The notes under the pieces: model-generated
The model's database searches: none
Seen by the model: the letters and a program-made list of their open reading frames with translations, nothing else
Told to the model about the DNA's origin: nothing
Program-made: the position numbers and the translations under genes
Source of the DNA: Sphaerodactylus townsendi
Lineage: Eukaryota
DNA: 64,000 bases
Reading direction: 5' to 3'
Assembly (NCBI RefSeq): GCF_021028975.2
Contig: NC_059425.1
Coordinates: 25,978,001 to 26,042,000, forward strand
In this document: in pieces, positions 37,482 to 49,411 of the stretch
Layout of the letters: every line of letters starts with the position of its first letter
Position numbering within the stretch: position 1 is the first letter of the stretch

Positions 37482-37609
37482 ATGTGGCACCTGCTGCTTC
37501 TGAGTGGATTGCTGGCATGGGTGCTACCCTGGGGTGCCTGTGCCCCCTGGGAGACCAACCTTGATGGTGATCAGACACTGGAATCCGCTGTGGTTACCCT
37601 TAATGACAG
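37482..37609 (+). CDS. GSDF-like exon 1 (signal peptide)
   Basis: ggccATG context; MWHLLLLSGLLAWVLPWGACA; AG|gtaagc donor in phase 2, matching exon 2. Confidence 0.83.
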
Positions 37610-46600: not shown

Positions 46601-49411
46601 CTACTGATTTCATTGATTTATGCTGTGTAATCTGCCTTGAGTATCAGTAGGTAGACTAAATAAAGCCAATAAATGAAAATAATCTTGCACTATTAAGCTC
46701 CTGCAGGCAGGGTCCAGGTTTCCTGACACATATCAGGATTCCTCAGGGTTTATTGCTGTACTCAAATTTGCCACATGGAACCAGCCTAGTAGGACTGACT
46801 ATTTGTTATGCACAAATGCATGTCTCAGGAACCTATTGTGCTCTTTCAACCTCAGTGCTAGAGTACTGATTCCTGCAGAGCTTCAACAAGCAACCTCCTT
46901 TAAAATTGTTTTGTCTCTACTCCAGTCACGCACACAAAGGCACATTATCAAAGGCTGATGTGAAGGAAGCAATGCTAGAGCAGTTGATCATACAGAGTTG
47001 CAGTGGGCAACTTCCTTTGTGGTAATTACATCGTGGTGTCACATTAGTTATTTAATGTATCAGTTTTTAATGGCACTGAGTTTCCACACAGGAATTATGT
47101 TCTAGACATTTCACAGGAAAGGCGAACACTGATTTTAGGGGTTGCTTGTGAAAACAGCCTTCCGCCCGTCCCTTGATCTCTTATTGATGCTTTTTCCTCC
47201 ATGCTCTCCACTCCCTTAGAACTTGGCTGGCAAAACTGGGTGCTGCACCCCAGTTCCTTCCTCTTCACTGAATGCTTGGGCTGTCAGTGTCATAAAAAGG
47301 AAGAGAGGCAGATAACTCCCGTGTGGATTCAAGAATGCGGACTCCTTGGACAGCCAAGCCATCAAACCACAGCTGGCTCAAAGCAGGTACAGTCTGTGGT
47401 CCTCCAAGGTTCTCCTGGGCAGTTTAATTGGGAGACTCCTGCACTGTTGAGGGGATGGGAAGAAGCCAACATTGCCTAGGGCTATTCAGACTAGAGCAGG
47501 GGTCTGCAACCGGTGGCTCTCCAGATGTTCATGGACTACAATTCCCATCAGCCCCTGCCAGCATGGCCAATTGGCCGTGCTGGCAGGAGCTGATGGGAAT
47601 TGTAGTCTGATGGGATTTTTAGTCCATGAACATCTGGAGAGCTGCAGGTTGCAGACCCCTGGACTAGAACTACCAACTTCTTTTGCTGCCCTTATGCAGC
47701 CCCATGAAGACAGGTGAAGCTTTTCCTGCCCTGGTGATGGTGAAAGTGTCAGTAGCTTCCTTTCCAGTTAAGACAGTGGCAATATTAGAAAGACTTATTA
47801 GCAACCCTATCGGGGTGGTGGTGGTGGTGGTGAAGGGGTTGTTTGCTGGCCAGATACAGGTTGGGGAACTCCTGGAGATTTGGAGATGGAGCCTGGGGAG
47901 GACAGGTACTTCAGTAGGGTACAACACTATAAAGTCCCCCCTCCAAAGCAGCCATTTTCTCCAGAGAACTGGCCCCTATAATCTGGAGAGGAGCTGTAAT
48001 TCCAGGAGATCCCCAGGCCCCTCTCGGAAGCTGGTATCTCTAGTCTTATTCTGTGGTGTGCACCGCCATACACATGAACACACATGAACCTGCCTTATAT
48101 TGACTCATCCCATGGGTCCGTCAGCCTTACCTACTCTGACTGGCAGCTGCTCTCCAGGATCTCAGGTCTTTGGCATCACCTGTTGCCTGATCCTTCTTAA
48201 GCGGAGCTGCCAATGATTGAACCTGGAAGCGTCTGCATGGCCAGGAGATGCTCTACCACCGAGCCGCAAATTACCACAGTGAAAAGTTGGCAGCCCCAGG
48301 TCAACACTTAGTACAAGCTGGTGCTGAAGCATATTTGTCAGGGAACAAATGTTTCCAGCAAAGTTCCCCTTTACTTGAATTCTCATGCAAAAGCTCTATA
48401 AGAGATGCCGGTGCCAGAAATGTCGGTGACTCCTCCCACTTGACCTTTCTCAGCTGCCTGTCTATGAACCAATGAGAGGCAGAGAACAATGTGTTGCCAC
48501 CATTTCACACGGTGGTCATTGGCTTCTTTGGCAAGCATTGTTTCCCCAAAACAGGGAAGGAAAGTGTTAGATTGGGAGTAAACAGCCCCTGGCTCAGGTG
48601 GTTTTGTTTGGGATCATGCGGAGCCAGTTCTCTGCCTAAGCAACCCTGAGGTGCTAGTAGCAACTAGTAGCATGTGGTCCACATGAATATAGAGTCAGAC
48701 TATCAGTCCATCAAAGTCAGCATTGCCTCCTCAGTCTGGCAGCAGCTGTCCAAGATCTTTCACTTCACCTACTGCCTGGTCCTTTTTAACTGGAGGTGCT
48801 AGGAATTGAACCTCAGACCCTCTGTATGCAAAGCAGAAGCTCTCTAATTCAGCCACAGCATAGGACAGTGGTGGCGAACCTTTGGCACTCCAGATGTTAT
48901 GGACTACAATTCCCATCAGCCCCTACCAGCATGGCCAATTGGCCATGCTGGAAAGGGCTGATGGGAATTGTAGTCCATAACATCTGAAGTGCCAAAGGTT
49001 CGCCATCACGGGCATAGGACAAAGTGGTGGCCATGACTTGTGCTGGTCATCTTCACTCCGCTGGACATATACACCTGCCAGTCAGCAGTGTTCAAGCCCC
49101 CCAAGGTACACAGGGTTTGGGGGGACTCAGGTACCAATCCCAAGCTTTAGTCAGGTGTTTGGTTGTATTAAAATACTCCTAGCTTGCTTCTGAACGGTGT
49201 ACATAATTTGAAGTAACTCCGTGCGTGATTCCAGTTGTCAGTTTGGGTGAGTAGCATAAAGCTTCTACACGCTGCTCGATCGCACCTGCTTGCTTTCCAC
49301 CAGGCACGCTGCTGTCAGCCACGTCGGACCCCGCTCTCCTTTGTGTTGCTCCAAGAAGACGGCACGTTGGTCGTACGGGCGCCACGCTTGGATCGTGACT
49401 GCCACTGCTAA
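37482..49411 (+). CDS. TGF-beta superfamily ligand, GSDF (gonadal soma-derived factor)-like, complete, 5 exons, 208 aa
   Basis: Exons 37482-37609, 41735-41883, 45874-45948, 47220-47386, 49304-49411 (627 nt; intron phases 2,1,1,0; all GT-AG). Protein: MWHLLLLSGLLAWVLPWGACAPWETNLDGDQTLESAVVTLNDSCRAEVLWRVASVMLRKLRLDRPPRITADVADQAREAWTKVATSSQGQDLNISSNQTLLIRRGSCIKTSYRITLDELGWQNWVLHPSSFLFTECLGCQCHKKEERQITPVWIQECGLLGQPSHQTTAGSKQARCCQPRRTPLSFVLLQEDGTLVVRAPRLDRDCHC*. It has a signal peptide, a LxKLRLxxPP prodomain helix and a C...ELGWxxWVxHP...C..C...CC.P...CxC cystine knot. TGF-beta membership is secure; GSDF orthology is inferred. Confidence 0.85.
39937..40070. mobile_element. Palindromic hAT MITE
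   Basis: Perfect 8-bp TSD gtctacag. Confidence 0.88.
41735..41883 (+). CDS. GSDF-like exon 2 (prodomain helix CRAEVLWRVASVMLRKLRLDRPPRI...REAW)
   Basis: Long polypyrimidine tract plus gacag; gtgagt donor. Confidence 0.87.
42641..43540 (+). mobile_element. CR1 LINE 3' fragment nested in a 5S/Sauria-like SINE, within GSDF-like intron 2
   Basis: ERDLGILVD...[20 protein letters not shown]...KVQRRATRMI; (TTCTTATG)n tail; tacca duplicated at both ends. Confidence 0.9.
44207..44795. mobile_element. hAT non-autonomous element nested in an older tagggttgcc-type MITE
   Basis: Same TIRs; perfect TSD ggtacaat. Confidence 0.88.
45039..45139. mobile_element. Short hAT MITE
   Basis: TIR CAGTGGTGGGATTC; perfect TSD gctccatc. 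Confidence 0.85.
45874..45948 (+). CDS. GSDF-like exon 3 (ISSNQTLLIRRGSCIKTSYRITLD; first knot Cys)
   Basis: ttctttctttactcgacag / gtaaat, phase 1-1, supplies Cys1 at the expected spacing from LGW. Confidence 0.83.
47220..47386 (+). CDS. GSDF-like exon 4 (LGWQNWVLHPSSFLFTECLGCQC...)
   Basis: cccttag / gtacag; TGF-beta LGWxxWxxxP signature. Confidence 0.9.
47497..47661. mobile_element. Palindromic hAT MITE
   Basis: TSD gactagag/gactagaa. Confidence 0.85.
48866..49011. mobile_element. Palindromic hAT MITE
   Basis: Perfect TSD gcatagga. Confidence 0.88.
49304..49411 (+). CDS. GSDF-like exon 5 (ARCCQP...DRDCHC*)
   Basis: caccag acceptor; CC and CxC motifs; TAA at 49409-49411. Confidence 0.9.
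   Translation, partial: ARCCQPRRTPLSFVLLQEDGTLVVRAPRLDRDCHC

What the first reader, a model, noticed from the sequence alone, without database searches (positions are those of the whole stretch)
37482..49411. Intact GSDF-like TGF-beta gene in a squamate (probably gecko) genome
Seen in sequence: five GT-AG exons splice in phase (2,1,1,0) into an uninterrupted 208-aa ORF. It has a signal peptide, a very short prodomain (C-x-x-E...LRKLRLDRPPRI...REAW) and a TGF-beta cystine knot (C...ELGWQNWVLHP...CLGC...CCQP...CHC). The ORF track shows only unlabelled fragments of it. Established knowledge: fish GSDF is a ~210-aa, 5-exon TGF-beta ligand of gonadal somatic cells with a similarly short prodomain and an LGWxNWVxHP motif. 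It has become the master male determiner in some fish (e.g. Oryzias luzonensis). It is known from fishes, coelacanth, lungfish and urodeles, and is generally described as lost in amniotes. Inference: this is a retained GSDF ortholog or close paralog in a reptile. It would be an overlooked gonadal signalling factor and a candidate sex-determination gene in a lineage with frequent sex-system turnover.
Basis: partly seen in the sequence, partly recalled or inferred. Interest (0 to 1): 0.95.

Follow-up and report, generated by a model that had tools for sequence, protein, structure and literature searches.

The report
GSDF gene retained in a gecko
This gecko genome carries an intact, conserved gene for GSDF, a small gonad growth factor known from fishes and some amphibians, and every squamate checked has it too, although the literature says reptiles, birds and mammals lost it.

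Summary
Five GT-AG exons (phases 2,1,1,0) join into a 208-aa secreted TGF-beta-type precursor.

It is a real, constrained gene:
- RefSeq models in other squamates have the same five-exon plan.
- The gene tree follows squamate phylogeny and places the window among geckos.
- dN/dS is 0.22-0.29.

In an exhaustive search of 1.84 billion proteins with exon 4, the only non-squamate hit was XP_030075827.1 of the caecilian Microcaecilia. Two papers use that protein as amphibian GSDF. It aligns end to end with the gecko orthologue (pairwise E 6e-33). It also has the same downstream neighbour, a p24/TMED gene placed tail to tail.

Upstream of the start codon, an NR5A (SF-1) site and a GATA site sit exactly 30 bp apart in all five squamates checked. 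Teleost gsdf promoters are reported to have the same order and a similar spacing.

Papers up to March 2026 say gsdf was lost in amniotes. RefSeq calls these proteins "uncharacterized" or "GDF15-like".

Limits:
- No RNA data exist for this genome.
- I could not fetch fish GSDF sequences, so I built no phylogeny of my own against them.
- The flanking genes differ from the teleost gsdf neighbourhood.

The scan's earlier notes cover this same stretch, not other DNA.

The parts
37305..37313 (+). NR5A (SF-1/LRH-1) consensus site CCAAGGTCA, 177 bp upstream of the ATG
   Evidence: Sits in a block that is almost invariant between window, Paroedura, Elgaria and Lerista. It is the only such site in the 600 bp upstream of the ATG in all five squamates scanned, snake included. 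Binding itself is inferred.
37335..37340 (+). GATA site AGATAA, exactly 30 bp downstream of the NR5A site
   Evidence: Invariant, and at the same 30-bp spacing, in all five squamates. Teleost gsdf promoters are reported with NR5A at -98 and GATA at -71 (PMC12989411).
37482..37609 (+). Exon 1: start codon, signal peptide, start of the pro-region (phase 2 at its end)
   Evidence: Donor CAG|gtaagc. Same size (128 nt) as exon 1 of the Paroedura RefSeq model.
41735..41883 (+). Exon 2: short prodomain with a conserved Cys and two predicted helices (phase 1 at its end)
   Evidence: Acceptor ...ctcgacag|, donor |gtgagt. The AlphaFold model of the Paroedura orthologue has helices at residues 42-59 and 70-86 with pLDDT 87-95.
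45874..45948 (+). Exon 3: two N-glycosylation sequons, the RRGS stretch and the first knot cysteine (phase 1 at its end)
   Evidence: Found by an exhaustive scan for in-phase AG...GT exons; it is the 75-nt candidate with strong splice sites that matches the 208-aa total. Exon 3 is also 75 nt in Paroedura and Elgaria.
47220..47386 (+). Exon 4: core of the TGF-beta domain (LGWQNWVLHP, CLGCQC, the QEC cysteine) (phase 0 at its end)
   Evidence: Pfam TGF_beta E 0.0027 for this exon alone, below the gathering score. phmmer against 1.84 billion proteins found squamate orthologues and the caecilian GSDF.
49304..49411 (+). Exon 5: CC pair, last beta-strands, terminal CHC and the stop codon
   Evidence: DNA contigs of three organism labels cover it, and no change inside it appears among the differences shown (124 differences were not shown).
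49628..49633 (+). Candidate polyadenylation signal AATAAA, 217 nt after the stop
   Evidence: Pattern only. There are no RNA data to confirm it.

Best explanation
This is a functional squamate orthologue of GSDF (gonadal soma-derived factor), the smallest TGF-beta-superfamily ligand.

Shown:
- It is an intact five-exon gene for a 208-aa secreted precursor. The precursor has a signal peptide, a roughly 60-residue prodomain of two predicted helices with no arm domain, and a C-terminal cystine-knot domain.
- It is single-copy in the records seen and has been inherited vertically in geckos, skinks, cordylids, lacertids, amphisbaenians, anguids, iguanians and snakes. It is under purifying selection.
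- It is orthologous to the caecilian gene that the literature calls GSDF.

Inferred:
- NR5A1/SF-1 and GATA factors drive it in gonadal somatic cells (Sertoli and granulosa lineage), acting through the conserved proximal module.
- The product is secreted, probably as a disulphide-linked dimer through the first Cys of the CC pair. It acts locally on germ or somatic cells through type I/II serine-threonine kinase receptors, as proposed for fish Gsdf, whose receptor is still unknown.
- GSDF was therefore not lost at the base of amniotes. It was lost later in other amniote lines.
For: - Gene model; the same exon plan in RefSeq orthologues.
- Constraint: dN/dS 0.22-0.29 in all pairs, and 0.16 for the mature domain against Paroedura.
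- Orthologues in 15 squamate species. The gene tree follows the species tree and puts the window in Gekkota with SH-aLRT 99.
- Link to GSDF: an exhaustive phmmer search with exon 4 found squamates plus XP_030075827.1 of Microcaecilia, and one repetitive 731-aa protein set aside as unrelated. That accession is the 'GSDF Microcaecilia unicolor' of PMC7096497 and PMC12989411.
- Paroedura against the caecilian protein: 30% identity over 180 aa including the prodomain, pairwise E 6e-33. The window model is 36% identical to it.
- Shared tail-to-tail p24/TMED neighbour in the caecilian, Paroedura, Elgaria, Lerista and the window.
- Fish gsdf has five exons (PMC9275722).
- NR5A and GATA sites 30 bp apart are conserved in five squamates. 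Teleost gsdf has NR5A at -98 and GATA at -71.
- TGF-beta fold.
Against: - There is no RNA evidence. No RNA run holds the gene, and the runs laid were DNA.
- I could not obtain any fish, coelacanth, lungfish or newt GSDF sequence, so grouping with fish GSDF rests on two published trees of the caecilian protein and on a language-model lead.
- In that same atlas search the caecilian protein did not list the cluster named GSDF.
- The window's neighbours (BBS1, a cathepsin, a TMED10-like gene) are not the teleost gsdf neighbours nup54, aff1, klhl8 and sdad1.
- The motif CLGCxC keeps a glycine, while papers call loss of the CxGxC glycine diagnostic of GSDF.
- No conserved furin site precedes the knot.
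Confidence: 0.75

Rival explanations
1. The gene is a separate TGF-beta lineage shared by caecilians and squamates. It is a paralogue, for example an old ohnologue, or a copy that moved. It is not the one-to-one orthologue of teleost gsdf, and the published caecilian 'GSDF' would carry the wrong name too.
For: - The locus differs. BBS1, a cathepsin and a TMED10-like gene flank it here, with a bZIP gene downstream in the snake. Teleost gsdf lies among nup54, aff1, klhl8, ptpn13 and sdad1.
- The knot glycine is kept.
- The published trees held only GSDF, AMH and INHA.
- The exon-4 phmmer search and the profile search of the word index reached no fish GSDF.
- The 2026 paper notes that a fourth ohnologue of gsdf/gdf9/bmp15 is thought lost.
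Against: - Two published phylogenies place the caecilian protein with coelacanth, lungfish and newt GSDF.
- By language-model features the top cluster for the gecko orthologue is the one named GSDF.
- Length, the very short prodomain, the exon count and the NR5A-GATA promoter order are shared with fish gsdf.
- Reviews place gsdf at a rearrangement breakpoint, so a change of neighbours is not unexpected.
Confidence: 0.17
2. The gene is a GDF15 paralogue, as several RefSeq records name it ('growth/differentiation factor 15-like').
For: GDF15 is the best solved-structure match by sequence profile, at E 2e-8 and 37 bits over the mature domain. It is also the best match for exon 4 alone, though not significantly. 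RefSeq gives this name in Erythrolamprus, Pogona, Eublepharis, Candoia and Pantherophis.
Against: - The match is weak and confined to the knot domain, and BMP6/7 score nearly as well.
- No TGF-beta propeptide was found.
- By my own knowledge, GDF15 has two exons, a long prodomain with an RXXR site and a different locus. This gene has five exons, three of them splitting the knot domain, and no conserved RXXR site.
- The caecilian GSDF is far closer, at E 6e-33 over the full length.
Confidence: 0.05
3. The gene is a transcriptionally silent relic or a recently dead gene whose ORF happens to be intact in this species.
For: No RNA run was found for this genome. The protein ends two residues earlier than in the other squamates, and exon 2 is 15 nt shorter.
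Against: - The ORF and splice sites are intact in every squamate examined across the deepest splits of the order.
- dN/dS is 0.16-0.29.
- The promoter block is conserved.
- All knot cysteines are conserved.
Confidence: 0.03

Closest known systems
Amphibian GSDF (Microcaecilia unicolor XP_030075827.1; Cynops orientalis gsdf, Biscotti et al. 2020, PMC7096497)
   Same: - 208 aa, as here, with a collinear full-length alignment that includes the prodomain motif S-C-R-E...D-[RK]-P-P.
- The same CLGCQC motif and the extra cysteine in the wrist region.
- The same tail-to-tail p24/TMED neighbour.
- It is the only non-squamate relative found in the exhaustive search.
   Different: - Only 30-36% identical.
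- The caecilian protein lacks the first Cys of the CC pair and the last knot Cys.
- Male-biased gonad expression was shown for the newt gene. Nothing is known for squamates.
Teleost Gsdf (medaka, trout, zebrafish, tilapia, sea bass)
   Same: - A TGF-beta ligand of about 190-215 aa with a signal peptide and a very short prodomain.
- Five exons and four introns (PMC9275722).
- A proximal promoter with an NR5A site followed about 27-30 bp later by a GATA site.
- By ESM Atlas features, the nearest cluster carries this name.
   Different: - Different neighbouring genes.
- The fish proteins are said to lack the glycine between knot cysteines 2 and 3, and this one keeps it.
- Sequence similarity was too low for exon-4 phmmer and the word-index profile search to connect them.
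- Intron positions were not compared.
GDF15, and BMP6/7 among solved ligands
   Same: The cystine-knot growth-factor fold (Foldseek probability 1.0; profile E 2e-8 to 4e-7). The LGWxxWV motif and the CC and CxC cysteines are also shared.
   Different: - No long prodomain and no RXXR site.
- The knot domain is split over three exons.
- There is one extra residue and an extra Cys in the CxGxC ring.
- The locus differs.
AMH and inhibin alpha (other gonadal TGF-beta ligands with SF-1/GATA promoters)
   Same: Gonadal somatic ligands. By my own knowledge, their promoters also combine SF-1 and GATA sites.
   Different: AMH is about 500-650 aa and carries an AMH_N domain. Neither AMH nor inhibin alpha appears among the PDB profile hits. 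The AMH cluster ranks well below GSDF by features, at 0.80.

Membership tests
GSDF | C-terminal TGF-beta cystine-knot domain | tested here: met
   - Exon 4 alone matches Pfam TGF_beta at E 0.0027, below the gathering score.
- The orthologues carry a precomputed PF00019 hit.
- The family profile matches GDF15 and BMPs in the PDB at E 2e-8 to 1e-6.
- The AlphaFold model matches BMP, activin and GDF15 chains with Foldseek probability 1.0.
GSDF | Small precursor (about 190-230 aa) with a signal peptide and a very short prodomain lacking the usual propeptide domain | tested here: met
   The protein is 208 aa and the orthologues are 208-228 aa. No TGFb_propeptide or AMH_N hit was found. The first knot Cys is residue 107.
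GSDF | Five exons and four introns | tested here: met
   The window and the Paroedura and Elgaria models have five exons with phases 2,1,1,0. Fish gsdf has five exons according to PMC9275722. Intron positions could not be compared with fish.
GSDF | No glycine between knot cysteines 2 and 3 (CxGxC without G), called diagnostic in PMC6007259 and PMC7096497 | tested here: inconclusive
   The motif is C-L-G-C-x-C in squamates and also in the caecilian protein accepted as GSDF. HMMER aligns it to the CIGA-C of GDF15 with a one-residue insertion, so the glycine is retained. The outcome depends on which Cys is counted as the third.
GSDF | Groups with fish, coelacanth and lungfish GSDF in a phylogeny | not testable with these tools
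   No fish or coelacanth GSDF sequence could be fetched by reference. Two lines are indirect: the nearest non-squamate protein is the published caecilian GSDF, and the atlas cluster named GSDF ranks first.
GSDF | Shared gene neighbourhood with a recognised gsdf | tested here: inconclusive
   Met against the caecilian gsdf, which has a p24/TMED gene on the opposite strand just downstream. Not met against teleosts: no nup54, aff1, klhl8 or sdad1 lies in the 64-kb window, which instead holds BBS1 and a cathepsin.
GSDF | Expression in gonadal somatic cells | not testable with these tools
   No RNA run holds the gene, and the runs laid were DNA. The only support is indirect: the conserved NR5A and GATA promoter module.
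GSDF | Proximal promoter with an NR5A site followed by a GATA site | tested here: met
   YCAAGGTCA followed by AGATAA exactly 30 bp later, 142-177 bp upstream of the ATG, in all five squamates. The sea bass and teleost consensus has NR5A at -98 and GATA at -71.
GDF15 | Two-exon gene, prodomain of about 165 aa, RXXR cleavage site (own knowledge) | tested here: not met
   The gene has five exons and a prodomain of about 60 aa. The stretch before the first knot Cys varies (IRRGS, IQRGS, TQRGR, IRQQN) and has no conserved RXXR site.
AMH / inhibin alpha | A long N-terminal region (AMH_N, or the inhibin pro-alpha region) and close sequence similarity of the mature domain | tested here: not met
   No such domain was found. 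Neither protein is among the PDB profile hits at E up to 1. The AMH cluster scores 0.80-0.83 by features, below GSDF.

The most novel reading that the evidence does not exclude
The gene shared by caecilians and squamates at the BBS1/cathepsin/TMED10-like locus may not be the orthologue of teleost gsdf, which sits at the nup54/aff1 locus. It would instead be an old paralogue, such as the 'lost' fourth ohnologue of the gsdf/gdf9/bmp15 group or a member of the paralogon that carries TMED10. That would make it a previously unrecognised vertebrate TGF-beta subfamily that survives only in some amphibians and in squamates.
Probability: 0.15. Interest if true: 0.8.

Novelty: new member of a known kind. 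Interest (0 to 1): 0.72.

Why it matters
Reviews and primary papers up to March 2026 state that gsdf was lost once in the common ancestor of amniotes (PMC7096497, PMC8292791, PMC12989411). An intact, selected orthologue across the whole of Squamata moves that loss to later, separate events in other amniote lines.

It also gives reptile biology a gonadal TGF-beta ligand that nobody has studied. In fishes, gsdf drives testis differentiation and has repeatedly become the master sex determiner. Squamates change sex-determining systems often, and most of their master genes are unknown.

Three things follow in practice:
- The gene becomes a concrete candidate to test in the lizards where gene editing works, Anolis sagrei and Paroedura picta.
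- It becomes a marker for Sertoli and granulosa lineages.
- The RefSeq names ('uncharacterized', 'GDF15-like') should be corrected.

Tried and rejected
- Joined model. Searches used single exons by reference and the database orthologues. I built the joined model only inside local scripts, from window coordinates, to check the frame and to align, compute dN/dS and build the tree.
- Single exons. Pfam on exons 1, 2, 3 and 5 found nothing, and exon 4 gave only a weak TGF_beta hit. Exon 4 against the PDB gave only non-significant GDF15 and BMP matches.
- Reaching fish GSDF. Word-index searches with the caecilian protein and with a family profile found only squamates and the caecilian. A metagenome scan found nothing. 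A tree with fish GSDF, INHA, AMH and GDF15 was therefore not possible.
- RNA evidence. No RNA holder was found. The four runs laid were DNA contigs that cross exon-intron borders, so they say nothing about splicing.
- Homodimer prediction. The job on the mature domain returned no verdict. It counts neither for nor against dimerisation.
- Atlas search with the caecilian protein. It returned generic 'TGF-beta family' clusters, not the cluster named GSDF. The atlas evidence is therefore only a lead.
- Anolis carolinensis. Its isoform is not on record for a contig look-up.
- Rejected idea. The conserved block upstream of the ATG is not a coding exon, although some RefSeq models translate it. It is out of frame with the CDS in the window, and its conservation shows no three-base periodicity.
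Full report

- exon 1, 37482-37609
- exon 2, 41735-41883
- exon 3, 45874-45948
- exon 4, 47220-47386
- exon 5, 49304-49411

All four introns are GT-AG with pyrimidine-rich acceptors. 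The phases are 2,1,1,0. The CDS is 627 nt and encodes 208 residues with one stop, at the end. The quoted motifs are all present.

Searches went exon by exon, by reference, or used database orthologues. The joined model existed only in local scripts, built from window coordinates.

**2. Is it a gene?**

An exhaustive phmmer search of 1.84 billion representative proteins with exon 4 (55 aa) returned eight proteins at E up to 0.001. Six are squamate proteins of 147-308 aa, including Paroedura picta at 76% identity (E 6e-23). One is a caecilian protein. One is an unrelated repetitive protein.

Cluster look-up and two further searches added more squamates: Heteronotia, Eublepharis, Rhineura, Elgaria, Lerista, Podarcis, Candoia, Pantherophis, two Anolis, Pogona, Erythrolamprus and Hemicordylus. 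All are named 'uncharacterized protein LOC...', 'hypothetical protein' or 'growth/differentiation factor 15-like'.

Mapping the RefSeq proteins back onto their loci shows five exons with phases 2,1,1,0 and near-identical sizes in Paroedura and Elgaria. This independently supports the window model.

Nei-Gojobori dN/dS between the window and Paroedura, Elgaria and Lerista is 0.22-0.24, and 0.26-0.29 among those three. Against Paroedura it is 0.16 for the mature domain.

A maximum-likelihood tree of 16 proteins recovers Gekkota (SH-aLRT 99), Lacertoidea (99), snakes (100) and anoles (100). The window sits inside Gekkota, closest to Heteronotia (80% identity) and Paroedura (76%).

The gene has therefore been inherited vertically and kept under purifying selection since the squamate ancestor. 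The genome is a gecko's.

**3. What is it?**

*Fold.* The family profile matches solved TGF-beta ligands only over the C-terminal 100 residues: GDF15 at E 2e-8, BMP7 at 4e-7 and BMP6 at about 2e-6. AMH and inhibin alpha are absent from that list.

An AlphaFold model of the Paroedura orthologue, built from a 14-sequence alignment, has mean pLDDT 74. It shows the growth-factor fold (Foldseek probability 1.0 to BMP2, BMP6, BMP9, activin A and GDF15). It also shows two confident helices in the short pro-region, at residues 42-59 and 70-86. No propeptide domain is detected.

*Link to GSDF.* The only non-squamate relative in the exhaustive search is XP_030075827.1 of Microcaecilia unicolor. This exact accession is listed as 'GSDF Microcaecilia unicolor' in the supplementary table of Biscotti et al. 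2020 (PMC7096497). It is listed again in the 2026 sea bass study (PMC12989411). Both papers place it in the GSDF clade.

Paroedura and the caecilian protein align over 180 residues, prodomain included, at 30% identity (pairwise E 6e-33). The window model is 36% identical to the caecilian protein. Both proteins are 208 aa, and both have the CLGCQC motif and the extra wrist cysteine.

[quoted passage not shown] The same search with the caecilian protein gave only generic TGF-beta clusters, so this stays a lead. Fish gsdf genes have five exons (PMC9275722).

**4. Surroundings**

The window holds four genes:
- a BBS1 exon on the + strand (1391-1756; Pfam E 4e-17);
- a papain-family cathepsin on the - strand (I29 propeptide at 23017-23325, a peptidase exon at 18234-18569);
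- the GSDF-like gene on the + strand;
- a p24/TMED gene on the - strand, whose first exon lies in 58028-58555. It matches only TMED10 among solved structures (E 3e-12).

The same order, cathepsin(-) / GSDF-like(+) / TMED(-), is annotated in Paroedura and Lerista. Elgaria has the TMED gene. The snake Candoia has the cathepsin, with a bZIP gene downstream. The caecilian GSDF gene also has an EMP24/GP25L gene on the opposite strand 3.4 kb downstream.

This microsynteny supports orthology between the squamate and caecilian genes. It does not match teleost gsdf, which lies among nup54, aff1, klhl8, ptpn13 and sdad1. By my own knowledge, BBS1, CTSF/CTSW and FOSL1 map to human 11q13, and the teleost block maps to human 4q21. 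Reviews note that gsdf sits at a rearrangement breakpoint. I could not examine the locus in coelacanth, lungfish, salamander or gar.

**5. Regulation**

A block from about 37227 to 37362 is nearly invariant, while the rest is poorly conserved.

The block contains CCAAGGTCA (37305-37313), the NR5A1/SF-1 consensus, and AGATAA (37335-37340), a GATA site. In all five squamates scanned, including a snake, each motif occurs exactly once in the 600 bp upstream. The two are always 30 bp apart, and they lie 142-177 bp before the ATG.

The NR5A pattern alone occurs nine times in the window. The evidence is therefore its conservation, not its mere presence.

The 2026 sea bass paper reports conserved NR5A1/NR5A2 sites at -98 and GATA sites at -71 in teleost gsdf promoters. 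It cites work showing that Sf1 activates gsdf. The shared order and spacing argue, by inference, for expression in gonadal somatic cells.

Several N-terminally extended RefSeq models (for example Hemicordylus, 308 aa) translate this block as '...PVKNAKVTAV...'. In the window it is out of frame with the CDS, and its conservation has no codon periodicity. Those extensions are probably artefacts.

**6. How it most likely works**

Shown: a secreted-type precursor with a two-helix pro-region and a cystine-knot domain, conserved and constrained.

Inferred:
- NR5A1 and GATA factors transcribe it in Sertoli and granulosa-lineage cells.
- It is secreted and forms a dimer through the first Cys of the CC pair, which is nearly invariant in squamates.
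- It signals locally through TGF-beta-family receptors. The receptor of fish Gsdf is itself unknown.

The stretch before the first knot Cys (IRRGS, IQRGS, TQRGR, IRQQN) has no conserved RXXR site. Cleavage at that point is doubtful, and the pro-helices may stay attached.

The ring motif has one extra residue and an extra Cys compared with CxGxC. That extra Cys and the wrist Cys could form an additional disulphide, but this is untested. A homodimer prediction gave no verdict.

**7. What is missing**

No RNA run holds the gene. The five holders found are DNA from three organism labels, and their contigs run across exon-intron borders. Among the differences shown for the more distant organism, none falls in exons 3-5 while the flanking introns carry many. 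However, 124 differences were not shown, so I draw no conclusion from this.

I could not fetch any fish, coelacanth, lungfish or newt GSDF, nor INHA or AMH sequences. The requested phylogeny was not done.

**8. Novelty**

Full-text searches found no paper that reports gsdf in a squamate. Three papers, the latest from March 2026, state that it is absent from reptiles and was lost in the amniote ancestor.

The proteins are already in RefSeq without a proper name. This is a new member of a known kind, not a new kind. It corrects a textbook-level statement about gene loss and opens a testable question in reptile sex determination. The sex-determination role itself is pure speculation at this stage.

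Noticed in passing
window 58028-58555 (-), and further exons probably between about 50 and 58 kb: First exon of a p24/TMED gene that matches only TMED10 among solved structures (E 3e-12). It lies tail to tail with the GSDF-like gene in the window, Paroedura, Elgaria, Lerista and the caecilian. It may be a TMED10 paralogue that mammals lack; that is my own guess and is untested.
   Followed up: partly
window 18234-18569 (-) and 23017-23325 (-): Exons of a papain-family cathepsin with an I29 propeptide and a [12 protein letters not shown] motif, of cathepsin F/W type. The orthologous products in Paroedura, Lerista and Candoia are 352-377 aa. It is the conserved upstream neighbour of the GSDF-like gene.
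   Followed up: partly
window 1391-1756 (+): An exon of BBS1 (Pfam BBS1, E 4e-17, profile positions 174-230). The window therefore begins inside the BBS1 gene.
   Followed up: no
window 47372-48288 and 48682-49074 (intron 4); also 46324-46716 (intron 3): Very high-copy interspersed repeats. Summed contig depth reaches up to 2e7, with hundreds of loose ends, in all four DNA runs. Related copies give the recurring '...VVHNIWRAASLTP...' ORFs at 36696-37052, 39879-40121 and 48796-48987.
   Followed up: no
window 42718-43068 (+, intron 2) and 61231-61665 (+): ORFs that look like C-terminal fragments of retrotransposon (CR1/LINE-type) proteins. Pfam gave no hit, so this judgement rests on appearance only.
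   Followed up: no
P0002 (Hemicordylus), P0010 (Heteronotia), P0017 (Pantherophis), P0018 (Anolis carolinensis): These RefSeq models carry 50-150 extra N-terminal residues. At least in Hemicordylus the extension is a translation of the conserved NR5A/GATA promoter block, so it is probably an annotation artefact. The Lerista model has shifted exon 2/3 borders and an odd insert.
   Followed up: partly
P0008 (Microcaecilia GSDF), C-terminal 35 residues: The caecilian protein has Ser in place of the first Cys of the CC pair and Gly in place of the last knot Cys. Either its knot and dimer differ from the squamate proteins or its last exon is mis-annotated.
   Followed up: no
window 49409-49411 and exon 2: The window protein stops right after CHC, while all other squamates have two more residues (QP, RP, RA or SL). 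Its exon 2 is 15 nt shorter than in Paroedura and Elgaria.
   Followed up: no
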